The notes below the pieces were generated by a model. The model was not told where the DNA came from and made no database searches. It saw nothing but the letters and a program-made list of their open reading frames with translations. Position numbers and translations under genes: made by a program. Below are positions 3,518 to 48,817 of a stretch of 64,000 nt of DNA, piece after piece (the stretch's first letter is position 1; every line of letters starts with the position of its first letter). Origin of the DNA: Octopus sinensis (taxonomy: Eukaryota); NCBI RefSeq assembly GCF_006345805.1, contig NC_043010.1, positions 51,274,001 through 51,338,000 on the forward strand, read 5' to 3'.

Positions 3518-4794
3518 TCAGGTTATCTCATAAGTTCTGTCCAATTTTGCCTTTTTTTAAATTGAATGAAATTTTATAGTATTTTAGAATGTCTAATGGA
3601 ATTAAAAATTAGTTTTATGTATTTGTGTACATTTAAACTAATTAAATATTGTTTTACAGAATAATAGAATTAAAATTTCTTTGATTAAAACCCTTTCTAA
3701 CATGGAAGTATCCAAAGAGCATTTTGAGGCTTTATGGGTACAAAAAAGGAAACACTGCAGCCAAAGTGACTCGAAACATACTCTCAGTTTATGGGAAAGA
3801 ATGCTTGAATGGAAAAACTTGCAGATGGTTTGCAAAATTCAAAAGTGGATATTTCAGCCTTGAAGATGAAGATTGAACAGGACGTCCAGTTGAGTTTGAT
3901 GATAAGCTTCTTGAGGCATCACTTGAAGAAAATCCTGCATTATCAGTTGAAGAATTGGCAATAAAGCTTAGTTCAAACCATACAACTGTTCATCGTCATC
4001 TTCAACAACTTGGAAAGGTTCCTAAACTTGGAAAATGGGTGCCTCATGAATTGTCTGAAAGCAACTGCAAATCCTGGGTTGACATCTGCTCTTCTCTCCA
4101 TTCTTGCGAACTCGTTTCACCCTTTTTGGATAGACTTATGACTGGTGATGAAAAATGGATCTTCTATCGAAATATTAAACATTGTAAACAGTGGCTTGGT
4201 AAAAGGAAAAAAGCTCAACCACAACTGAGAAGGGAACTTCATGGAAAAAAAGGTTCTTCTCTCTATCTGGTGGGATTGTAAAGGAGTAATTCACTTTGAA
4301 TTGTTACTACCTAATGCAACAATCAATGCTCAAGTCAACTGTCAGCAATTAGAGCACTTGAACCAAGCTTTGAAGAAAAAGATGCCCGCTTTAGTGAATC
4401 GAAAAGGAGTGATGTTTCATGAGGACAATGTGCAACCCCACACTGCTAAGATCACATCACAGAAGATCAAAGAGCTTGCTTGGAAAAAAATTCCTCATCC
4501 ACCTTATTCTCCCGACCTTGCTCTTTCAGACTACCATTTGTTTCGTAGTTTACAGAATCATTTGGGGGACATAACTTTCGCAAGCCAGGAGGAGGTCGAA
4601 ACTGACATTTCAGAGTTCTTTGCTTTGAAACCAAAAGAGTTTTACATTGATGAGATTAAAAAGCTCGTAATTAGATGGAAGGAAGTCATAGATAATCAGA
4701 GAAAGTACATTCAAGATTAAATTTCAATTAGATATAACATTTGATCACTTGTTTTCTTTATTCAAAATTCGGACAGAATTTATGGATGACCTGA
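3518..4794 (+). mobile_element. Full-length decayed mariner DNA transposon (~1277 bp)
   Basis: TIRs TCAGGTTATCTCATAAGTTCTGTCC / GGACAGAATTTATGGATGACCTGA; TA TSD at 3516-17 and 4795-96. Confidence 0.95.
3702..4720 (+). pseudogene. Frameshifted mariner DD34D transposase
   Basis: WVPHEL, TGDEKW, HEDNVQPH and YSPDLALSDYHLF motifs across several frames. Confidence 0.95.
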
Positions 4795-5900: not shown

Positions 5901-5934
<34 letters not shown>

Positions 5935-5938
<4 letters not shown>

Positions 5939-6079
5939 CGCATATTTGCCATTTGAATATGGCTAACCCCTAAGGGTGGATGCTACTGTAGTTTGTAGCC
6001 CCAGGAAGATACAAACTACAAACTACAGTAGCATCCACCCTTAGGGGTTAGCCATATTCAAATGGCAAATATGCGTCAC
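5935..6079. repeat. Perfect 64-bp inverted repeat with 17-nt spacer
   Basis: Arms 5935-5998 and 6016-6079 are exact reverse complements. Confidence 0.95.
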
Positions 6080-6118
6080 GATGTGTTACCGCTACTGTTT
6101 ATAACTCGCTCTGAGATT

Positions 6119-6746
<628 letters not shown>

Positions 6747-6989
6747 AACATATGTGTGTGTGTATATATAGATATAAATATAGATATATCTTCAGGTCAT
6801 TTTCAAAGAAATTATCGGCTACATTAATATCTCTTGCAGTTGTTCACTCAAGCGTGTAGACATTTGACCTTTGTTACAGGAATTATAATCGATTTCATGC
6901 TAGAATGAACAGAATTACATTTCCTTTAGATATTCCCTTTGAAATATTTATAATATTAAAGATGTTCATTCCATTCTCAGTTGTGATTT

Positions 6990-7760
6990 TGAGAATTGTT
7001 GCCCAGGTCTTTGCGAGCCTTTCAATGGCAGTAACTAAGGTAACAGGTATTTTTTCCCATGTGTTGACACTTCAGTAACCATGAGTAGGGTATACAGTCA
7101 AATGCTTTCCCCTAATGAAGTCCTACTGTCACAAAGCTTCAACAGAGTTTTCTTACTTCAAACAGTGGAACTTTGTTCATCAAAAGTTACACAGTTGTCC
7201 CGCGCTGGCTGCTGCCGTCACCGGCGGTGCGCGCAGTGCTCTTTCGGTCGTCGTTGAATTCTTCAGCGGCGGTCGTTGGGCACTCGCATTGCGCCGTCGG
7301 CCGGCCTGTTTGACATCGGGGTGTCGCAATTGTTTGCGACGATGAAAAACCGCCGCTAAAAAAAAAAAGTTACACAGCACATCCCTAAACTCATTTCTTT
7401 CCATCTGCCTGTTGATCAGTCACTACATTGTTGGACTCACAATGATCCTGGAGGACTTAGTCGAAGCAGCTTGTATACAGTTTGTACATGTTTAATCAGG
7501 CAATGGGCTTATAGTTTTCTACCAACTTAATGATTTTGATCATGACCATAAGATTCATCTGTGTTATAGCAAGCCATTTGAGCATATCAATCTGACCTTC
7601 TATAGTCTTTTTGAATATGCATAGCTAGTTTGCTGCAAAAATCAGCCTTATGTATCAATATCCAACAATTAAGTTTCTTTCAAGTGCTTTCCTGTTATGC
7701 AGTTTGTCTTTAGACGTAGTGTAAGTTTTTAGGTCATCCTCTAGAGTAACTAAGAAGTAA
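6990..7760 (-). mobile_element. Decayed R4/Dong-like (REL-endonuclease clade) non-LTR RT fragment
   Basis: Minus-strand NYKPIA..YKLYTSC..LQDHCESNNVVTDQQA.GKK..GCA..LLMNK and GKAFDCIPYSWLLKC, with stops and frameshifts. Confidence 0.75.
7195..7364 (+). other. Retroposed GC-rich structured RNA fragment (163 nt + A-tail) with 13-bp TSD
   Basis: AAAAGTTACACAG at 7182-7194 and 7365-7377; 103/163 GC; A-run 7358-7368. Confidence 0.85.
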
Positions 7761-8599
7761 GTTATCTTTTTATATATGTACTATTTTGTCTTTTTAGTGG
7801 TGGTTGAGGTGGGAGTCAAAATAGTGCAATATGACCCAAATTCTAGCTATGCCATTGCATATACTTGGTTGTTTGTGTGTGTGTGTGTGTAGTATTATAT
7901 TTATGCTAGAGTTCAGTGAGTAATTAGGTTTGTTGATTGAATAACAGAGCACTGCTCCTTCATAATCGTCAGGAGACTCCATCAAGTAGGATATAAACAA
8001 AACAGCACAATATATTTACTAAAACTTACTATTTGGTAACCAGATATATTTGCTCATTTTCTTCTTTTTTCCCCCGTTTATTATAATCCTTACTTTTCAT
8101 CAACAATTTCAACAAATCAGTCAATAGTTTATTCTCCTTCTTTGTTCACAACTTCTAGCAGATGTTCAACATGACCATCTGCTGATCCAGTTCCTTAATG
8201 GATTGACACAAATCCTCAAGGACAGGCTGGTTAAACCAATCCTCATCAAACTAAACAGGTTAGCCAGAATGCAGGGAAACTGTGATGTCAAATTCCCCTT
8301 CTTGAAATGAGAAAACCTTTTCTATGCAGTACTTTTCACAACCATCCCTTCTCTGCACACAGATCACATTTCCCAAATGGTTTTGGCAGTTTTGGAATCT
8401 TTGTAAAAAGCAAAGAAAAGCCAGCATTTTATTCTCCTTTTTTTAACTTGGCACTCAATTGTCATATGTCTGAAAAAGTGGTAAAATTTATTCAAAGTTC
8501 AAAAATAATAGACAGAAGTTGTAGAGGCAAAATAGAGCTACAAAGCACCATTTAACACTAGGATAAAAGTATTTTTTGTACTAATTCTTTTATTCTTTT

Positions 8600-12674: not shown

Positions 12675-13077
12675 ATCAGTCATTTCACTGCGGCCACACT
12701 GGAGCACTGCCTTTAGTCAAACAAATTGACCGTAAGACTTATTCTTTGCAAGCCTAGTACTTATTATATCGATATCTTTTGCTGAACCACTAAGTTACGG
12801 GAATGTAAACACACCAACATCAGTTGTCAAGAGATGGTGGGGGAACAAACACACATACACACACACACACATAAACACACACACACACCACACACACACA
12901 CACACACACCACACAAACACACACAACAGGCTTCTTTCAGTTTCTGTCAACAAAATCCACTCACAAGGCTTTGGTTGGCCCGAGGCTATAGTAGAAGACA
13001 CTTGCCCAAGGTGCCACACAGTGGGACTGAACCTGGAACCATGTGGTTGATAAGCGAGCTACTTACCACACAGCCAC
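12675..13077 (-). mobile_element. SINE family A
   Basis: Family consensus match. Confidence 0.85.
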
Positions 13078-13810
13078 AAATCTTTAATAAAACATTTACA
13101 TATACACATTTTCATATGTAAGTATGTATGTATCTATATATCTGTCTATATACATAAATTTACAAACACACACACATTGCTATTTAACTATCTTGGGTCA
13201 TTGACCAAAGGAAGTCATACTATGTTTAGTTTGGTTGAGTGAAAGCAAATCCTGTATTCAACAATAGCCTATTTATATATGTATGTATGTAGGAGTATGT
13301 GAGTGTGTGTGCTTGTGTGTGTGTGTTGTGTATGTATAAATCTGTGTAGATGTGTTGTGTTGTGTGTGTGTGTATGTAGATGTGTGTAGGTGTGTTTTAT
13401 TTTGTGTGTGATTAGTGCTGACTATTGCAAGAAAGTCATCCAGAGTATTTCATTAAACTGCATCTGGTAGCGGGGCCTTGGTGTGGGAGTTCTGGGGTTT
13501 TGAGGAGTGTGGAAGCCCCCATTAGCCCCTATTATTCCCAGGTCTTCTCTGCACCAGTGTAGTAGGATCTTTTAGGGTCCCAGCTATTGGTTAACTAACA
13601 TGTGAACCACTGGGAGTGAAGAACTCCAAGTTCTTGTCAGAACTTGGAGAAAGTAAAACATGGTTGTGTGGTAAGAAGCTTGCTCCCCAACTACATGGTT
13701 CAGGGTTCAGTCCCTTGTGTAGCACTTTAGGCAAGTGTCTTCGACTATAGCCTTGGGCCAACCAAAGCCTTGTGAGTGGATATGGTAGATGGAAACTGAA
13801 AGAAGCCTGT

Positions 13811-21175: not shown

Positions 21176-21894
21176 TCCCTCTCTCTTGGAGAGGCATAAG
21201 CACCTACACACACGGCAGTAACTTCCGCCTACCAAATCCACTCACAAAGCTTCGGTCGCCCAGGGGCTATAGCTAAACGACACTTGCCCAAAGTGCCATG
21301 CGGTGGGACTGAGCCCGAAACCATGTAGCTAGGAAGCGAGCTCCCTATATATATATATATGTATGTATGTGTGTGTGTCTGTGTTTGTCCCCCCCCCAAC
21401 ATCACTTTACAACTGATGCTGGTGTGTTTACGTCCCCGTAACTCAGCGGTTCAGCAAAAGAGACCGATAGAATAAGTACTAGGCTTACAAAGAATAAGTC
21501 CTGGGGTCGATTTGCTCGACTAAAGGTGGTGCTCCAGCATGGCCACAGTCAAATGACTGAAACAAGTAAAAGAGAAAGAGAGAGAGAAACCTTCCATCTC
21601 ACTAAACCACAATTGTCCCTGAAAGTTTTTTTTTTTTTTAATATTTACTATGGATTGCTTGAAGCTAACTTTCTTCCTACACCTTGATCCTTGGATCTTA
21701 TATATGAATGGTGTATGTACTTGTAGAGAGATATCTACAAAACATTATTATAAATCCGGCATCTGTCTTCAGGGTGGAGAGATTGGCATCTACTGGTTCA
21801 GATCATAATGGAAAGAATTCAAGGGTAGAATGGGTGAAGAAGAAGGAAAAGGCAAGTAGAAGTAGGTGGAAGGATAAATATATACTCTTTACTC

Positions 21895-22288
21895 TCTTTT
21901 ACTTGTTTCAGTTATTTGACTGTGGCCATGCTGGAGCACCGCCTATAGTTGAGCAAATCAACCCCAGAACTTATTCTTTGTAAGCCTGGTACTTATTCTA
22001 TCGGTCTCTTTTTGCCGAACTGCTAAGTTACGGGGATGTAAACACACCAGCATCGGTTGTCAAGCGATGTTGGGTGGACAAACACAGACACACAAACACA
22101 CACACATATATATACATATATATATATACGATGGGCTTCTTTCAGTTTCCATCTACCAAATCCACTCACAAGACTTTGGTCGGCCTGAAGCTATAGTAGA
22201 AGATACTTGCCCAAGTTGCCATGCAGTGGGACTGAACCTGGAACCATGTGGTTGGTAAGCAAGCTACTTACCACACAGCCACTCCTGC
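21895..22288 (-). mobile_element. SINE family A
   Basis: Family consensus match. Confidence 0.88.
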
Positions 22289-22710
22289 AAAAACGTTTTT
22301 GGAATGGTAAATCTTCCAGTATGTAACGCTGTAAATAATGGTGTAGCATGTTGTAAATATTGGGTTAAAAAAAAACCTTGGATTGAGAAGGTTGGCGGCT
22401 TTGCATAGGACTTAAACCCACAGTGATACACACATACACACACACATATAGGTGCAGGTGTGGCTGCGTGGTTAGATGTTTGCTTCCTAACCACATAGTT
22501 TCGGGTTCAATCCCACTGCATGGCACCTTGGGCAAGTGTTTTCTACTATAGCCTTTCTACTAATGCCTTGTGAGTGAATTTGGTAGAAGGAATCTGAGAA
22601 AAGCCCATCATACATGTGTGTGCGTGTTTGCCCCCCACCACTGCTTGGCAAGCAGTGTTAGCATGTTTACGTCCCTGTAACATTAATGGTTTGGTAAAAG
22701 AGACCGATGT

Positions 22711-27300: not shown

Positions 27301-27669
27301 TTTAAAGCTTTGTACTGACCAATACCCTCTGTGTGAGCCCATCATGTGTGTATAAATATGTGTGTGTGTATGTGTATATGTGTACACACATATATATGTC
27401 CGTGTTTATATCTTTCTGTCTGTCATGCTGCCTCTGCTTAACAGACCACATTGGTTTGTTTATGTGTCTATCCTTATAACTTAGCAGTTTGGCAAAAGAA
27501 AGTGACAGAATGAGTACCAAACTCTAAAAGAAAACAAAAACAAAACAGCATAAGGGGTCAATTTGTTCCACTAAAATCCCTTAAGGAGGTACCCTAACAT
27601 GATACCCATCCGATTACTGAAACAAGTAAAAGAGAAATGTGCAGCTACCCACTTTAGATACTCTCTTTA

Positions 27670-28050
27670 CTCTTTTACTTGTTTCAGTCATTTGACTGTG
27701 GCCATGCTGGAGCACACCTTTAGTCGAGCAAATCGACCCCAGGACTTATTCTTTGTAAGCTTAATACTTATTCTATCGGTCTCTTTTGCCAAACCGCTAA
27801 GTTACGGGGAACATAAACACACCAGCATCGGTTGTCAAGCGATGTTGGGGGGACAAACAGACACACAAACACACACAAACATATATACGACGGGCTTCTT
27901 TCAGTTTCCGTCTACCAAATCCACTCACAAGGCTTTGGTCGGCCCGGGGCTATAGTAGAAGACACTTGCCCAAGGTGCCTCGCAGTGGGACCGAACCCAG
28001 AACCATGTGGTTGGTAAGCAAGCTACTTACCACACAGCCACTCCTACGCC
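27670..28050 (-). mobile_element. SINE family A, near full length
   Basis: Family consensus match. Confidence 0.88.
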
Positions 28051-28629
28051 TATAGATGAGAAGAAATCTCTTCTTTGTTTTGCATCATTGGTATCCAAAA
28101 GGTCTTTCATTCTTGGTGTTGCAGTAAGCATTGCAGCTAAACCACTGTCATGTCTGGATCATTAAGTAATAGTTTAATAATAATAACAAGAGCATTTGCA
28201 TAACTGATACTTATTTTATCAACCCCGAAAGAATGAAAGGCAAAGTCAATCTCGGAAGAATTTGAACTGAGAATGTAAAGACAGATAAAATGCTGCTAAG
28301 CGTTTTGTCTGATCCATTAATAATTCTGCCACCTTGCCACAAGAAATAATAATGATAATAATCATCATCATCATCGTTTAACATCTGTTTTCCATGCTAG
28401 CATGGGTTGGACGGTTCAACTGGGGTCTGGAAAGCCCGAAGGCTGCACCAGGTTAGTCAGATCTGGCAGTGTTTCTACAGCTGGATGCCCTTCCTAACAC
28501 CAACCATTCCATGAGTGTAGTGGGTGCTTTTTACGTGCCACCAGCACGGAGGCCAAGCGAGGCTGGCAACAGCCACGATCGGATGGTGTTTGTTACGTGC
28601 CACCGGCACGGATGGTTTCAAATTTTGCC

Positions 28630-29693: not shown

Positions 29694-30040
29694 ATAAAAA
29701 TTTTTTACCTGCACCCATCTTAAGTATATTCCCAGTGAATAATGCTCCTAATAATTAGCCTCCTAAACTGAGGATTGTGGGTTCAAATGTAGTCGCCCCA
29801 GCATGACCACCACCAAATCACTGAAATTAGGTAAAAGAGTAAATGACCACTAAATTCATTTTGAGCGATCATCATATCCATTTCTGCATTTTCAGAATTG
29901 TATAACATTTGAAAAACTGTACTCTGAGCATCTAGACCAAAATCCATATATTGAACTGCTTTGTCTACTCTGTGTTAATGCATGAAAGTGTGGCATGGTC
30001 TGGTCTATAACATCGGAAATGAGAAGGTGTTTGAGAAGCT

Positions 30041-30446
30041 TTTACTTGTTTCAGTCATTTGACTGTGGCCATGCTGGAGCACCGCCTTTAGTCGAGCAAA
30101 TCGACCCCAGGACTTATTCTTTGTAAGCCTAGTACTTATTCTCTCGGTCTCTTTTGCCAAACCGCTAAGTTACAGGGATGTAAACACACCAGCATTGGTT
30201 GTCAAGCGATGTTGGGGGGACAAACACAGACACACAAACATATAAACACACACATATATACATATCTATATATACATTTATACGACGGGCTTCTTTCAGT
30301 TTCCATCTACCAAATCCACTCACAAGGCTTTGGTCGGCCCGAGGCTATAGTAGAAGACACTTGCCCAAGGTGCCACGCAGTGGGACTGAACCCGGAACCA
30401 TGTGGTTGGTAAGCAAGCTACTTACCACACGGCCACCCCTATGCCT
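30041..30446 (-). mobile_element. SINE family A
   Basis: Family consensus match. Confidence 0.88.
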
Positions 30447-30563
30447 ATCCAATTTTTATTTGTTTTTCTTCTTTCTTTTTACCCATTTTTCCTTCCTTTT
30501 TTTTCTTCACTACCCCCCTCTCTTAACACTTTCTCTTTCTCTAATTCTTCTCTCATTCATTAG

Positions 30564-30734
30564 AAATGGTCAAATCTTCCCTGGAAAAACTGATGATGAT
30601 ATCTGGAGAGCAAAGCACCTCTATGACTCAGCATTCCACCCAGACACAAAGGAAAAAATGTTTATTCTTGGTCGAATGTCAGCTCAGGTGCCGATGAACA
30701 TGACAATTACAGGTTGCATGATGACATTCTACAA
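30564..30734 (+). CDS. SFXN1: Sideroflexin coding exon 2 (NGQIFPG...HPDT...MMTFYK)
   Basis: cattag|A ... TACAA|gtaag; contains the HPDT and [11 protein letters not shown] motifs. Confidence 0.97.
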
Positions 30735-30899
30735 GTAAGACAATTAATTGATCTTTTTTTTTTTTATTTTCTTTTGTTCATGCAATCGTTGTTGTTGTTG
30801 TTGTTGTTATTGTTGCTGCTATTGTACCTGTCACTTTTTGTAGCTCTTGCAGTTATTGTTATTGATGTTGTAATTATTGTTGCAGCACTTGTTTGCTGT

Positions 30900-31689: not shown

Positions 31690-32175
31690 GACGTTTGTAC
31701 AGAGTCCATGTCTGGTTGCATTGGACTGGACACCTTATTAGAATGAAGGATAGAAGGATTCCTGAGCAGATGCTCTATGGAGAACTTGTGAATGGAAGGA
31801 GACTCCGGCAGAAACCAAGGCTGCGATTTAAGGACTGTGTCAAATCCTCATTAAAGGCCTGTGATATGCAGGACACTGACTGGGAGAACAATGCCTGTCA
31901 TCGCCACAGATGGAGGAAGCAGGTTAAGGAGGGGATCGACACTTTTGAGAGAGCACGTATCCAGCATAGAGAACTTAGGCGAGCTGCGCGAAAGCGCACG
32001 GCTCGTATAGTGAATGGGGAAAGCTTGGTCTGCAACGTTTGCAGTCGTGTATGCTTGTCAAGAGCAGGGCTCATTAGCCACCAACGGAGCCGCAAATGCA
32101 AAATATAAGTTAGTCCTAGAGCGTACAATGTTCCTGAAGGTCAGCAATGGTCTTCCTCGGTCACGAGTGGACGGC
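31690..32175 (+). mobile_element. RTE (BovB-like) LINE 3' fragment
   Basis: LHWTGHLIRMKDRRIPEQMLYGEL..G.R....PRLRFKDCVK and C..C...C.SRAGLISHQR. Confidence 0.92.
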
Positions 32176-32595
32176 CATCATATATATATATATATATATA
32201 TAAGAAATGGAAGCCAAAAGAATTAATTGAAGAATTATAAATTCAATTCAATTTAATTATTTTATACAAACAACACATCTCGTAAATTACAGCTGTTTCC
32301 ACTTCATTAATAAAACCAAGTTTTTCAAGAATAATAAAATCCCATGTAAATATATAATGAGGCTTTATTAGATCGACATATCTTCAATATTTTATGAAAA
32401 ATAGCAATTGAAAATTTTATAACTGCTAATGCTTTTCAAAAAAATTACTTTTTGAGAGTGAGCTTAATCATAATTAAGTAATCTAACTGAAATTATGTAA
32501 ATTCTTAAATTTAAATCTATTAGTATCCAGTTCTTTAACTGATTTTGTTGCATAATACACACATTCATATATACATATTTATATGTATCTATATA

Positions 32596-33490
32596 TACAC
32601 ACGTTTCTTCTAGGAACATTATCAACCTCTTTCTGATGATTTGCTCCATGACTTTATTGATATGCAAAGTCAGAGAGATTGTCCTGTAGTTTTGGGCTTC
32701 TGCTCTGCTTTCACCTTCTTGGATAGGGCATATAATGCTTTCTTTCAGCTTTTTAGAAAGTATACCACTTGCAAGGAAACTTTGGAAAAGTATCTGAAGT
32801 GGTGTCACTGAAGTCTGCTTACATGACTTTAGGAGAATAACTGAGAAATCACCAAGACGAGAGGGAGAGTATGAGCTCATTTCATCTATGGCCACTGTTA
32901 CATATATATAATTGATGGCTGGCACCTCCTTTTTTAGAGTTGCAATATCAAGGAATTCAGCCAGATTTTTTATGTGCATGTGTCCAGTGAGGTGGGGAGT
33001 GAAGACACTTTTAAATCGTTCACTGAGTATCTCACTTTTCGTTCCTGGGTCCGCCATCAGTGAGTCATTCCCTTGGAACAATGGTCCTATCTTATCTTGT
33101 ATTGTGGCTGTTTCCTTTGCGAATTTATAGAAAGCTTTGGGATTTGTTTTTATGCTTTCCACAGCCATTTTCTCTCTCTCTCTGCTTTTTGTCCTTTCAT
33201 GAGAGAGTTTGATCTTGCTTTCAATTTCTAGAAGCGTCCGTGTTAAGATAGACTTCTCTCTATCCTTCAGTTGCCTATTCATCCACTTTGAGATCTTTGA
33301 CCTGCACCTCATGAGGATTTTTCTGTCCCTGGGAATCTTGTTTGACAGTGTACTGGCCTTTCTTTCTGGGATATATTTAGTGCATATAACTTGAACTGTT
33401 GACATAAACTGACTGAGTTTCAAATCAATGTCTTGCATACACAGAATGTTGGCCCAGTTCTCCATACTACATACCTCTCAACAAACTGTG
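32596..33490 (-). mobile_element. CR1-clade LINE ORF2 internal fragment
   Basis: NPKAFYKFAK, KESIICPI and NYRTISLTLHINKVMEQIIR in the 333-aa ORF. Confidence 0.88.
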
Positions 33491-33704: not shown

Positions 33705-33803
33705 AACACCAATGGCTGTGATATTTTGGCAGTGGTTTAACCAGTCTTTCAATGCTATCGTCAATTATACCAACCGAAGTGGCGACACACCAATTCCTGT
33801 TTC
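33705..33803 (+). CDS. SFXN1: Sideroflexin coding exon 3 ([32 protein letters not shown])
   Basis: Polypyrimidine tract + ccag| ... TC|gtatgt; conserved [17 protein letters not shown]. Confidence 0.97.
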
Positions 33804-34289
33804 GTATGTTAATTAAATTTTAATCCCTTTCTTCATTTCATTTCTTTTCCAGACAAATTCTAAAAATTCTTTCCCTCTCTCTCCTTCTCTCTCTCTCTCT
33901 CTCTTTTCCATGCACACAGTCACACATATACACACATTCACAACACACTCTGTTACACATATACACACATTCACAACACACTCTGTTACACATATACACA
34001 CAAATATCCCCCTGCTCACAAATGTACCTTCACACTTTCTCACAGACATTACACTGAACACATACATTTATACACACAATCACACACTGACATATACCTC
34101 CACCCTCACACACACACACGTACACAGTTTCTTGTTCGGTATTTTTCTGATGTGCAGAACATCATAAACTCTTTCACGTTTATGTCATTAGTGACATCAG
34201 ATCCTCCATGTTGTTTCTGTTGGATGTATCGGTGAAGGTCAGATACCTCATGTTACTTTTGTCCGGTCCCCAATCTTAGCCATGTCAGA

Positions 34290-35780: not shown

Positions 35781-35840
35781 ATGTCTAGTAAACCATTTTT
35801 CTCTTATGTTTTTATATCAGTCAGCTCTGCTCTGTTTCAG

Positions 35841-35916
35841 GCAGCTTGGCTTATCTTATGTACTGGCCACTGGTGGTGCCATGGCAACAGCCTTGGGTTT
35901 CAACAAAGTAGTGAAG
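35841..35916 (+). CDS. SFXN1: Sideroflexin coding exon 4 (QLGLSYVLATGGAMATALGFNKVVK)
   Basis: tgtttcag|G ... AAG|gtatgt; phase matches both neighbours. Confidence 0.95.
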
Positions 35917-39372: not shown

Positions 39373-39551
39373 TGAGTGTGTCTGTGCATGCGCATCACTG
39401 TGTGTAGGTCACAAATGTGAATAATGAAAGACTGAAGTCAAACTTGCAATTTTAATTGAGACTCAGCAGGAGCTTAGAGCTACTCTGAGAGTTGTTTCTA
39501 CTCCCTTCCATTTTATTTACCAGTGTCTCTTTTCTTAATTCCATTTTCCAG

Positions 39552-39637
39552 TCTATGTCGCCGCTTATAGGAAGATTTGTCCCCTTCACTGCTGTTGCTG
39601 CTGCTAACTGTATCAACATACCTTGTATGAGAAGCAG
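39552..39637 (+). CDS. SFXN1: Sideroflexin coding exon 5 ([29 protein letters not shown])
   Basis: ttttccag| ... AG|gtggg; conserved [19 protein letters not shown]. Confidence 0.97.
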
Positions 39638-40758: not shown

Positions 40759-40886
40759 GGAAATAATGAAAGGCATTCCGATCTTTGATGAAAGAGGCCA
40801 ACGTCTTGGAGAATCAACAGCAGCAGCAAAGAGTGCAATTACTCAAGTGGTCTTCTCCCGTATTCTAATGGCATGTCCTGGCATGA
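40759..40886 (+). CDS. SFXN1: Sideroflexin coding exon 6 ([19 protein letters not shown]...RILMACPGM)
   Basis: tatccag|G ... A|gtaagt. Confidence 0.97.
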
Positions 40887-41190
40887 GTAAGTAATCAATG
40901 GCTACCACTGCCATCACCACCACCACCACCACCACTCACTATTACTATTCTTATACCGAGGAGCCAACAAACCTCTGTGTGTGTGTGTATAATATATATA
41001 TATGTATATATAGATCGTTAGCCACTACACACATTTTTTTCTCTCCTTGTTTTTTCTGTGTTCCTTTCTGTAGAAGAACGTAGGCCTGAAACGTAAAAGA
41101 CTTTTTCTATTCCTGAGCATTATACTAATACATCTGTTTGTTTTGTTCACCACCTGTCTTCATCTTTTGTTTTTTTCGTAAACTCTCCTA

Positions 41191-47743: not shown

Positions 47744-48306
47744 TAGATTGATAGAGACAGACAGACAGAGATTCATAGATTCATAGATAGATATAGATTG
47801 ATAGATACCATTTTAATAATGACATGTACAATATTTAGAATAGTAAAAAGCGAAGACAACATTCTTGTTTCATAATTTCATTCTAGGTTTTACAGCTGTT
47901 TCAGCATTTAAAATACAAATGTCATTGCCCACCTACTGATGTAATTGATATATAGAAATAGATAACTAATGAAACAGTTTATTCATCTCATTTAAATTAT
48001 GTATTTTTATGTATCAAACATTTGATTATCTAGATGATGATGATGATGCATTTTAATTGCTGAAGCAGCTGCATTACTTAGAATGAAATTATGGAACATC
48101 AGTGAAATCTGCTTTTTATTATTTCACTGTTTTGCTTAGAACATTTTTTAAACCAATTTAACTCTATGCAGATTTATTCTGTTTATGGTTATAGCATTGA
48201 AGTTATAATATATAGGAGTTTAATTTACATGTTATTAATTGAATTCTTAAATTCAATAGATAAATTTTTATAGCATTTAAGCACTAATATAGTATATTAA
48301 ATAATA

Positions 48307-48711
48307 GGCATAGGAGTGGCTGTGTGGTAAGTAGCTTGCTTACCAACCACATGGTTCCAAGTTCAGTCCCACTGTGTGGCACCTTGGGCAAGTGTCTTCT
48401 ACTATACCCTCGGGCCAACCAAAGCCTTGTGAGTGGATTTGGTAGACGGAAACTGAAAGACGCCCATCGTATATGTGTATATATATGTATATGTATGTGT
48501 GTGTATATGTTTGTGTGTCTGTGTTTGTCCTCCCAACATCGCTTGACAACCAATGCTGGTGTGTTTACGTCCCCATAACTTAATGGTTCAGCAAAAGAGA
48601 CCGATAGAATAAGTACTAGGCTTACAAAGAATAAGTCCTGGGGTCGATTTGCTCAACTATAGGCGGTGCTCCAACATGGCCACAATCAAATGACTGAAAC
48701 AAGTAAAAGAG
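48307..48711 (+). mobile_element. SINE family A, full length
   Basis: Family consensus match. Confidence 0.9.
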
Positions 48712-48817
48712 TAATATGTATAATATATATGGTGGTGTTCCAGCATGACTGCAGCTGCAGAGCTGAAATGAATAAAAGAATATATTTATATTACACATCC
48801 ATATATATAACATATGT

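What the first reader, a model, noticed from the sequence alone, without database searches (positions are those of the whole stretch)
7182..7377. Retrocopy of an unidentified GC-rich structured RNA (A-tail + 13-bp TSD) inserted in an R4 RT relic
Seen: 163 nt at 63% GC in an AT-rich context, an A-tail, and flanking AAAAGTTACACAG duplications. Deleting the insert plus one TSD restores the host RT motif G-C-A-x-x-L-L-M-N-K, so it is a true in-vivo insertion, not contamination. The sense strand folds with deviations mostly G-U compatible: 7246-7258/7262-7274 (13 bp, four G-U), 7204-7211/7298-7305, 7221-7241/7278-7300, plus hairpins GACATC/GTGTC and GTCGCAA/TTGCGAC. The 3' terminus ACCGCCGCT (7349-7357) is perfectly complementary to 7265-7273, allowing an alternative fold. 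It matches no SINE here and no snRNA, 7SL or tRNA I recognise. Known: TPRT of oligoadenylated RNAs at T-rich nicks gives this signature. Inference: the source is a pre-rRNA spacer or cephalopod rRNA expansion segment, or an undescribed ncRNA or new SINE.
Basis: partly seen in the sequence, partly recalled or inferred. Interest (0 to 1): 0.7.

Follow-up and report, generated by a model that had tools for sequence, protein, structure and literature searches.

The report
Young A-tailed retrocopy of unidentified RNA
A 163-base GC-rich piece of DNA with an A-tail and duplicated flanks is a real, recent retrocopy of a strongly folded RNA, pasted into an old dead transposon; I could not identify the source RNA with the databases available, so it remains an ordinary kind of event with an unknown template.

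Summary
There is an exact 13-bp duplication, AAAAGTTACACAG, at 7182-7194 and 7365-7377. It flanks a 163-nt insert (7195-7357) with 63% GC and 24 CpG, followed by A11. A diverged copy of the host repeat from an unrelated public contig (L006) aligns on both sides. L006 carries one copy of the target site and no insert, so this is a true insertion.

The sense strand folds into a 34-bp hairpin (7221-7300, -50.8 kcal/mol, z = -7.2). It has 7 G.U pairs and no A.C mismatches. The antisense strand folds much worse.

The mechanism, target-primed reverse transcription by an A-tail-dependent LINE nicking at TTTT/G, is well supported.

The template stays unidentified:
- no Rfam family and no tRNA;
- no second copy in the window by blastn or by a covariance model;
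- no hit in protein, viral, metagenome, prokaryote, plasmid or phage collections.

The window's own genome and its rDNA were not searchable. My rough ranking of the template:
- pre-rRNA variable region, about 35%;
- rare SINE or 5'-truncated LINE tail, about 45% together;
- undescribed ncRNA, about 15%.

The "R4 RT" label for the host is unsupported, because Pfam and PDB searches see no RT. This is a known kind of event and of modest interest.

The parts
7182..7194 (+). Left copy of the 13-bp target-site duplication AAAAGTTACACAG
   Evidence: Exact direct repeat D1. A single homologous copy of this site is present in the uninterrupted relative L006.
7195..7220 (+). 5' segment of the retrocopy, essentially unstructured (26 nt). 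It abuts the duplication with no filler bases.
   Evidence: Folds at -4.9 kcal/mol, z = +0.4. Sequence read.
7221..7300 (+). Long hairpin of the retrocopied RNA: 34 bp with a 3-nt loop, 7 G.U pairs, no A.C mismatches, and one UUU/UU internal loop
   Evidence: -50.8 kcal/mol, z = -7.2, 0 of 200 shuffles as good. The antisense strand gives only -27.6 kcal/mol, z = -2.7. Pair list.
7301..7357 (+). 3' domain of the retrocopy. It contains a 7-bp stem-loop GTCGCAA-TTGT-TTGCGAC (7323-7340), then GATGAAAAACCGCCGCT. There is no AATAAA or ATTAAA signal.
   Evidence: -21.0 kcal/mol, z = -2.1. Sequence read. The 3' end 7349-7357 is complementary to 7265-7273 (I2).
7358..7368 (+). A-tail (A11). The last four A are shared with the right duplication, so 7 to 11 A came from the template.
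   Evidence: Sequence; A-run scan.
7365..7377 (+). Right copy of the target-site duplication. The inferred first-strand nick is on the minus strand, 5'-CTGTGTAACTTTT/GATG-3', between 7182 and 7181 of the empty site.
   Evidence: The nick position is inferred from the geometry of target-primed reverse transcription.
6785..7194 (-). Host: downstream part of an old, decayed interspersed repeat with RT-like motifs (GKAFDCIPYSW..., ISKGISKGNVILFILA)
   Evidence: 65% identical to L006 539-949. The 58-aa piece 6898-7071 matches P0123 at 49% identity, E = 1.8e-5. Pfam sees no RT.
7378..7709 (-). Host: upstream part of the same decayed repeat (ENYKPIA.LNMYKLYTS ... QQADGKK)
   Evidence: 68% identical to L006 213-523. 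The frame is continuous with the other side once 7195-7377 is removed.

Best explanation
This is a single, young, dead-on-arrival retrocopy made by target-primed reverse transcription.

Proposed steps:
1. An A-tail-dependent LINE endonuclease/reverse transcriptase nicked the minus strand at 5'-TTTT/G-3' inside an old decayed repeat.
2. The T-run primed on the short A-tail of an RNA.
3. The enzyme copied 163 nt of that RNA.
4. A second nick 13 bp away produced the duplication.

The template was a non-coding, GC- and CpG-rich, A-poor RNA. Its own strand folds into a very stable G.U-containing 34-bp hairpin plus a small 3' stem-loop. The copy has no promoter of its own that I can see and most likely does nothing at this site.

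Shown: the insertion, the duplication, the tail, the empty site, the strand-specific structure, the youth of the insert, and the absence from known RNA families.

Inferred: the enzyme class and the nick site.

Not resolved: the template. My ranking, given that it is a retrocopy, is a rough prior-times-likelihood estimate and not a measurement:
- oligoadenylated pre-rRNA variable region (ETS, ITS or expansion segment), about 35%;
- rare non-tRNA or 5'-truncated SINE, about 22%;
- 5'-truncated tail of a low-copy A-tailed LINE, about 22%;
- undescribed cellular ncRNA, about 15%;
- mRNA end or other, about 5%.

The confidence given here is for the retrocopy mechanism, not for any one template.
For: Insertion signature:
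- Exact 13-bp duplication flanking the insert plus A11, in a region with no tandem repeats.
- It is the only such signature in the window.

Empty site:
- L006 is a roughly 66% identical copy of the host repeat from an unrelated Logan contig. It aligns to both flanks and has one copy of the target site and no insert.
- The host reading frame is continuous once 7195-7377 is removed.

Youth:
- The duplication is perfect and the A-run is pure.
- CpG observed/expected is 1.48 inside, against 0.35 and 0.12 in the flanks.

Strand-specific RNA structure in the A-tail orientation:
- z = -3.0 in sense against -0.5 in antisense for the whole insert; z = -7.2 against -2.7 for the hairpin.
- 7 G.U pairs and 0 A.C mismatches.
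- Only 1 of the 7 G.U uridines sits in a TpG context, so the G.U pairs are not CpG decay after insertion.

Not a known or coding RNA:
- No Rfam family at E up to 10, and no tRNA.
- No hit in a six-frame protein search.

Target site:
- The top-strand target TC|AAAA is one base off the L1-type TT|AAAA site.
- A-tail plus L1-type duplication plus L1-type cleavage site is the accepted signature of LINE-mediated trans-mobilisation (PMC3747384).
Against: - No parent locus or second copy was found, so the RNA origin is inferred from the signature alone.
- Every other retroelement end that I examined in the window (the abundant SINE family, and the LINE end at about 32.2 kb) ends in a microsatellite or has no A-tail. 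I did not see an A-tail-dependent LINE here.
- An A-tail of 7 to 11 is short for a very young LINE-type insertion.
- Read support for the assembly at this site could not be checked.
Confidence: 0.85

Rival explanations
1. The template is the retroelement's own kind of RNA. The insert would be an ordinary copy of a low-copy repeat family: either a 5'-truncated A-tailed LINE (3' UTR only) or a SINE lacking a tRNA-type head. Its 3' stem-loop would be the tail recognised by the reverse transcriptase.
For: - Base rate: LINE proteins act preferentially in cis, and their SINEs far outnumber trans-mobilised cellular RNAs (PMC3747384).
- The same review describes a stem-loop shortly before the 3' repeat, and A-tailed LINEs or SINEs with structured, required 3' tails (SART1, plant and Chlamydomonas L1/SINE pairs). 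The insert has a 7-bp stem-loop 17 nt before the tail.
- Young Alu-like SINEs are likewise GC- and CpG-rich islands with A-tails in AT-rich DNA (my own knowledge).
Against: - No second copy, even a diverged one, in 64 kb that hold more than 50 other repeat copies.
- No A/B boxes, tRNA, 5S, 7SL or snRNA head.
- No polyadenylation signal, which a Pol II-transcribed A-tailed LINE would normally have.
- No LINE-like ORF end in any frame.
- The composition is far from the other retroelements in the window.
Confidence: 0.4
2. The template is a Pol I transcript: a fragment of a pre-rRNA spacer (5' ETS, ITS1 or ITS2) or of an rRNA expansion segment. It would have been oligoadenylated by the nuclear surveillance machinery and then captured in trans.
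For: - The composition (63% GC, CpG observed/expected 1.48, 11% A) and a long irregular G.U-rich helix are what rDNA variable regions look like in AT-rich, CpG-depleted animal genomes (the comparison is my own knowledge).
- No polyadenylation signal and a short A-tail fit oligoadenylated decay intermediates better than mRNA or LINE tails.
- rRNA is the most abundant RNA in the cell.
Against: - No similarity to any conserved rRNA core. The Rfam SSU, LSU, 5.8S and 5S models are silent at E up to 10, so it would have to lie wholly inside a variable region.
- Direct-repeat 'cryptic simplicity', expected from slippage-driven expansion segments, is not above dinucleotide shuffles.
- rRNA retropseudogenes are rare relative to transposon copies.
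- The species' rDNA could not be searched.
Confidence: 0.3
3. The template is an undescribed cellular structured non-coding RNA of about 160 nt or longer. It would be abundant enough in the germ line to be captured. This single retrocopy would be its only trace in the window.
For: - The hairpin is extremely stable and sense-strand-specific, with a 7:0 excess of G.U over A.C. That points to selection on the RNA.
- It is absent from all 4227 Rfam families.
- There is no coding signal.
Against: - No homologue is available, so there is no covariation.
- No recognisable box, Sm site in single-stranded context, H/ACA or C/D architecture, or Pol III terminator before the tail (inspection).
- Spacers and transposon tails show the same structural features.
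Confidence: 0.13
4. It is the 3' end of a processed mRNA pseudogene, or of a viral mRNA: a heavily 5'-truncated copy of a polyadenylated Pol II transcript.
For: - A-tail and duplication.
- The + frame starting at 7196 is open for 49 codons and stops 12 nt before the tail.
Against: - None of the common polyadenylation hexamers occurs in the last 40 nt.
- An open frame of 49 codons is expected about 30% of the time at this composition (my own arithmetic), and two antisense frames are fully open too.
- No protein hit in any frame. No viral contig contains the two 25-mers searched.
- 63% GC with CpG observed/expected 1.5 is atypical for UTRs in a 38% GC genome.
Confidence: 0.05
5. It is not a biological retrocopy. 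It would be an assembly chimera, contamination, or a DNA-mediated insertion such as a transposon or repair filler.
For: - The composition is foreign to its surroundings.
- No second copy or parent was found anywhere searched.
Against: - Chimeras and contaminants do not create an exact 13-bp duplication of the host site next to an A-tail.
- The relative L006 shows that exactly one copy of that site is ancestral.
- There are no terminal inverted repeats, and 13 bp is not a DNA-transposon duplication size.
- The 20-mer hits in prokaryotic and metagenome contigs do not extend beyond the 20 bases.
Confidence: 0.03

Closest known systems
L1-type retropseudogenes of non-messenger RNAs (rRNA fragments, Y RNA, 7SL, snRNA and snoRNA-derived retroposons of mammals)
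   Same: It has the same signature: an intron-less copy of a structured RNA, a 3' A-tail, a 7-20 bp target-site duplication, and an A-rich target resembling TT|AAAA. It is inert on arrival (signature as summarised in PMC3747384).
   Different: The parent RNA is not any described family. The host genome's visible retroelements are not A-tailed, so the mobilising LINE is unknown. The tail is only 7 to 11 A.
Alu/B1-like A-tailed SINEs
   Same: It is short, GC- and CpG-rich, derived from a folded RNA, A-tailed and flanked by duplications, and it stands out as a CpG island in AT-rich DNA.
   Different: There is no internal Pol III promoter or 7SL, tRNA or 5S head. There is no second copy in 64 kb, whereas the window's real SINE has 25 or more copies.
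5'-truncated copies of A-tailed LINEs with a structured 3' tail (e.g. SART1 of the R1 clade; plant and algal L1 lineages with stringent tails)
   Same: It has an A-tail, a duplication, an arbitrary 5' end, and a stem-loop shortly upstream of the tail (PMC3747384).
   Different: There is no recognisable ORF2 end, no polyadenylation signal, no relative in the window, and the composition is very GC-rich.
rRNA expansion segments and ITS helices
   Same: It has long, GC-rich, G.U-containing irregular helices, high CpG and low A.
   Different: No flanking conserved rRNA core is included. There is no excess of cryptic direct repeats. No rDNA sequence was available for a match.

Membership tests
LINE-mediated (target-primed) retrocopy | 3' A-tail directly followed by the target-site duplication | tested here: met
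   A11 at 7358-7368, overlapping the right duplication at 7365-7377.
LINE-mediated (target-primed) retrocopy | Direct duplication of 7-20 bp of host sequence at both ends, more than chance would give | tested here: met
   13/13 identical. Expected about 5e-4 per window from base frequencies. No tandem repeat nearby.
LINE-mediated (target-primed) retrocopy | An uninterrupted (empty) version of the site exists | tested here: met
   L006, a homologous copy of the host repeat, aligns to both flanks with one copy of the site and no insert. This is a paralogue or homologue, not the orthologous allele.
LINE-mediated (target-primed) retrocopy | T-rich nick site of an APE-type endonuclease | tested here: met
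   The inferred minus-strand nick is 5'-TTTT/G; on the top strand this is TC|AAAA against the consensus TT|AAAA. The consensus is from my own knowledge and PMC3747384.
LINE-mediated (target-primed) retrocopy | Identified parent gene or RNA | not testable with these tools
   The window's genome is absent from the collections. No eukaryotic DNA database was available.
SINE | Many dispersed copies | tested here: inconclusive
   Zero further copies in 64 kb by blastn word 7, self-blast and the covariance model R1 with filters off. This excludes only a high-copy family.
SINE | Head derived from tRNA, 5S, 7SL or snRNA, with an internal Pol III promoter | tested here: not met
   ARAGORN finds none. 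Rfam finds none at E up to 10. The best A-box-like string matches 8 of 11 positions and there is no B box (inspection).
rRNA retropseudogene | Sequence match to SSU, LSU, 5.8S or 5S rRNA | tested here: not met
   No Rfam rRNA model matches 7100-7450 at E up to 10, and none matches the whole window at the gathering threshold.
rRNA retropseudogene | Sequence match to a spacer or expansion segment of the same species' rDNA | not testable with these tools
   No rDNA of the source species was reachable.
Processed mRNA pseudogene | Polyadenylation signal 10-30 nt upstream of the tail, and coding or UTR homology to a gene | tested here: not met
   No AATAAA, ATTAAA or common variant in 7318-7357. The six-frame protein search is empty.
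Any described RNA family (Rfam 15) | Covariance-model match | tested here: not met
   The only match is CRISPR-DR20 at 13.2 bits, E = 8.8, against a gathering score of 42. That is chance.
R4/Dong-clade LINE (identity of the host relic) | Recognisable reverse-transcriptase domain | tested here: not met
   Pfam finds no RVT_1 in single or stitched frames, even at E up to 10. The PDB search finds nothing. Only motif-level resemblance remains.
R4/Dong-clade LINE (identity of the host relic) | Restriction-like endonuclease C-terminal to the RT, no APE domain, and clade placement by phylogeny | not tested
   The only relative recovered (P0123/L006) is itself a 121-aa decayed fragment.

The most novel reading that the evidence does not exclude
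The insert is the fossil of an undescribed, abundant, lineage-specific structured non-coding RNA. Its hallmark is an 80-nt, 34-bp G.U-rich hairpin followed by a small stem-loop. It would have been captured once by a LINE, and the parent gene is still to be found.
Probability: 0.13. Interest if true: 0.55.

Novelty: new member of a known kind. Interest (0 to 1): 0.27.

Why it matters
As it stands, this is one more retropseudogene. Its value is as a pointer in three ways.

First, it shows that an A-tail-dependent LINE machinery was active recently in a genome whose visible retroelements end in microsatellites.

Second, it preserves 163 nt of a strongly folded RNA that no RNA-family library recognises. 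If the parent is a new ncRNA or a new SINE founder, this copy is the lead to it. If the parent is an rDNA spacer, it documents germ-line capture of oligoadenylated pre-rRNA debris outside mammals.

Third, the insertion is young enough to be a possible presence/absence marker between individuals or sister species.

Tried and rejected
- **Known RNA families.** Rfam on 7100-7450 at E up to 10, Rfam on the whole window at gathering thresholds, and ARAGORN all gave nothing.
- **Second copies.** Blastn word 7, self-blast, and a covariance model built from the insert with its minimum-energy structure were run over the window and L005-L007 with filters off. Only generic palindromes scored 25 bits or less, on both strands.
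- **Coding or viral origin.**
  - A concatenated six-frame translation searched against 5.8 billion proteins gave no hit. Caveat: candidates were capped at 8000.
  - Two 25-mers against viral contigs gave nothing.
- **Prokaryotic or metagenomic origin.** The 20-mer GTCGCAATTGTTTGCGACGA hit four contigs, but none extends beyond the 20 bases. Blastn against plasmids and phages gave nothing.
- **Same-genome or orthologous locus.**
  - Exact look-ups of window ORFs failed.
  - The best sideroflexin-exon relative is 92% identical at the amino-acid level and 83% at the nucleotide level, with no alignable non-coding DNA.
  - So no allele or orthologue comparison was possible.
- **ADAR hyper-editing as the origin of the G.U pairs.** Rejected. 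5 of the 7 guanines have a 5' G, the disfavoured ADAR context (the preference is from my own knowledge).
- **CpG decay after insertion as the origin of the G.U pairs.** Rejected. Only 1 of the 7 uridines is in a TpG context.
- **Cryptic simplicity as an rRNA expansion-segment hallmark.** Not present.
- **Specific RNA architectures, all by inspection.**
  - Hammerhead: CGAUGA followed by GAAA lacks helix II.
  - Also not met: SECIS, H/ACA, C/D, or an Sm site.
  - ENE-type triple-helix clamp: the U-rich internal loop is only 3 x 2 nt.
  - Helitron: that element makes no duplication, and this insert has one.
- **RT identity of the host.** Pfam and PDB searches were negative. The exhaustive search with a 58-aa stop-free piece returned one real relative (P0123) and three repeat-protein artefacts.
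- **Literature.** Strings from the insert and from the SINE, and the two sample accessions, gave no paper.
Full report
**What is there**

- AAAAGTTACACAG occurs at 7182-7194 and again at 7365-7377.
- Between the two copies lie 163 nt (7195-7357) followed by eleven A (7358-7368). The last four A are shared with the right repeat.
- The insert is 63.2% GC with only 11% A. It has 24 CpG, observed/expected 1.48.
- The 482 nt to the left have 4 CpG and the 523 nt to the right have 2. The window as a whole is 37.8% GC with CpG observed/expected 0.42.
- No tandem repeat lies near the site.
- From the window's base frequencies this 13-mer has probability of about 3e-8. That gives about 5e-4 expected flanking coincidences over the 37 A-runs of 8 or more in the window (my own arithmetic).
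- It is the only A-run in the window with such a flanking repeat.

**Is it a true insertion?**

Removing 7195-7377 joins the flanks into one continuous minus-strand reading frame..ENYKPIA*LNMYKLYTS..QQADGKK*V*GCAV*LLMNK..GKAFDCIPYSW...

More importantly, an exhaustive protein search with a stop-free 58-aa piece of this relic (6898-7071, minus strand) recovered P0123 at 49% identity, E = 1.8e-5. P0123 is encoded on a 992-nt Logan contig, L006.
- L006 aligns to the window's minus strand on both sides of the insert: 7709-7395 at 68% identity and 7188-6785 at 65%.
- In a three-way alignment L006 carries one copy of the sequence homologous to the duplicated site (TGGAACAACTTTT against CTGTGTAACTTTT) and nothing where the window has the 183 extra bases.

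So the ancestral state of this repeat family is the empty site. The 163 nt, the tail and one duplication copy were added later. Assembly chimeras or contamination would not produce this.

**Age**

The host repeat is old. It has many stops and is about 66% identical to its relative. The insert is young: the duplication is perfect, the A-run is pure, and its CpG content is undecayed inside DNA that has lost nearly all of its own CpG.

**The RNA**

The A-tail defines the sense strand as +.
- That strand folds at -77.8 kcal/mol (z = -3.0; 1 of 200 dinucleotide shuffles as good). The antisense strand is unremarkable (z = -0.5).
- The signal comes from 7221-7300, a 34-bp hairpin with a 3-nt loop, one bulged C, one AUU bulge and a UUU/UU internal loop.
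- This hairpin folds at -50.8 kcal/mol, z = -7.2, against -27.6 kcal/mol, z = -2.7 for its complement.
- It has 7 G.U pairs and no A.C mismatch. Neutral decay of a DNA palindrome would give both kinds equally, so 7:0 has one-sided p of about 0.008.
- Only one of the seven G.U uridines is in a TpG context, so these pairs are not CpG decay after insertion.
- Five of the seven guanines follow a G, which is the context ADAR disfavours, so hyper-editing of a perfect duplex is unlikely.

The G.U pairs therefore look like native features of a structured RNA.

The first 26 nt are unstructured. The last 57 nt form a smaller domain with a 7-bp stem-loop (7323-7340) 17 nt before the tail.

- 7204-7211/7298-7305 is possible but competes with the main hairpin.
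- GACATC/GGTGTC would have a 2-nt loop and is not feasible.
- The complementarity of the 3' end with 7265-7273 is real.

**What it is not**
- It is not in any of 4227 Rfam families, even at E up to 10. The single listed match, a CRISPR repeat model at 13 bits, is noise. There are no rRNA cores, snRNAs, 7SL, 7SK, RNase P/MRP, ribozymes or tRNAs.
- None of the common polyadenylation signals precedes the tail, and there is no T-run terminator.
- Nothing in any of six frames matches any of 5.8 billion proteins.
- No viral contig contains either of the two 25-mers searched.
- The four prokaryotic or metagenomic 20-mer matches do not extend.
- Plasmids and phages give nothing.
- It is not repeated in the window. 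Blastn at word size 7, a self-comparison in which the insert has zero coverage, and a covariance model of the insert run without filters all find only the insert itself.

By contrast, a roughly 400-bp tRNA-derived SINE occurs at least 25 times in the same 64 kb.

**Mechanism**

The geometry is the textbook one for target-primed reverse transcription by an A-tail-dependent LINE (PMC3747384).
1. The minus strand of the empty site reads 5'-CTGTGTAACTTTT/GATG-3'.
2. A nick after the T-run leaves a T4 3' end that pairs with the A-tail.
3. cDNA synthesis copies the RNA.
4. A top-strand nick 13 bp away gives the duplication.

On the top strand the target is TC|AAAA, one base from the L1-type TT|AAAA. 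These steps are inferred from the product, not observed.

One oddity: the other retroelement ends that I inspected in the window are not A-tailed. The SINE has no A-tail, and the LINE end at about 32.2 kb finishes in (AT)n. A paper on octopus LINEs reports RTE and Dong elements as the intact families there (PMC9115989). The element that supplied the enzyme is therefore not visible here.

**Which RNA?**

I could not settle this. The window's own genome is not in the searchable protein or contig collections:
- exact look-ups fail;
- the best sideroflexin-exon relative is 92% identical in amino acids and 83% in nucleotides, with no alignable non-coding DNA.

No eukaryotic DNA, rDNA or repeat library was available. 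The ranking below is reasoning, not measurement.
- **For an rDNA variable region:** the composition, the CpG content, the low A, a long G.U-rich helix, a short oligo-A tail and the lack of a polyadenylation signal.
- **Against an rDNA variable region:** no conserved core is included, there is no excess of cryptic direct repeats, and such retrocopies are rare.
- **For a transposon RNA (rare SINE or 5'-truncated A-tailed LINE):** the base rate of cis and SINE copies over trans-mobilised cellular RNAs, and a stem-loop close to the tail, as in LINE/SINE tails that the enzyme recognises.
- **Against a transposon RNA:** no second copy, no Pol III head, no polyadenylation signal and no ORF end.
- **An undescribed ncRNA** fits the structure and the Rfam silence, but there is no positive evidence for it.

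I put these at roughly 35% (rDNA), 45% (SINE and LINE tail together), 15% (new ncRNA) and 5% (mRNA end or other), given that it is a retrocopy.

**The host**

The 'R4 RT relic' label is not supported by any test I could run.
- Pfam finds no RVT_1 in single or stitched frames, even at E up to 10.
- A PDB search finds nothing.
- The only relative recovered is itself a decayed fragment.

The motif resemblance (NY[KR]PI..L...YKL; KAFD.IP.SW) makes a LINE RT plausible. The clade is open.

I could not verify the cephalopod attribution. The context is an animal locus at least 23 kb upstream of a conserved sideroflexin exon, on the same strand.

**Verdict**

The template is unresolved. This is a new member of a known kind, of modest interest unless the parent turns out to be a new ncRNA. 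One BLASTN against the source genome and its rDNA would decide.

Noticed in passing
window, e.g. 12676-13078, 21885-22289, 27661-28054, 30039-30448, 48300-48714: At least 25 copies of a roughly 400-bp tRNA-derived SINE, with a B-box-like GGTTCAGTCCC. It has an internal (CA/TA)n microsatellite and no A-tail, and it dominates the window.
   Followed up: partly
window 4241-4720 (+): An intact 159-aa ORF matching the C-terminal half of a mariner-type transposase (Pfam Transposase_1, E = 3.9e-18).
   Followed up: partly
window 30562-30735, 33721-33804, 35821-35916, 39534-39632, 40766-40891 (+): Exons of a sideroflexin gene with long introns full of repeats. The retrocopy lies at least 23 kb upstream in the same orientation.
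   Followed up: partly
window 31695-32203 (+) and 32464-33465 (-): Two LINE fragments back to back. One has a C-terminal ORF with a C2H2 finger and ends in (AT)n rather than an A-tail. The other is a 333-aa ORF ending in an NYRTISLT-type RT start.
   Followed up: partly
window 5932-5998 / 6016-6082: A near-perfect 67-nt inverted repeat (99% complementary, 17-nt spacer) flanked by TA/TG microsatellites. The covariance model picked it up on both strands as a generic hairpin.
   Followed up: partly
window 6100-6790: About 650 bp of TA/TATG microsatellite with GC below 10%, directly adjoining the decayed host repeat.
   Followed up: no
L006 (Logan SRR11869391, 992 nt): A decayed copy of the same host repeat family in an unrelated public sequencing run. 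It is reported on contigs of 5 samples, and I could not identify the organism.
   Followed up: partly
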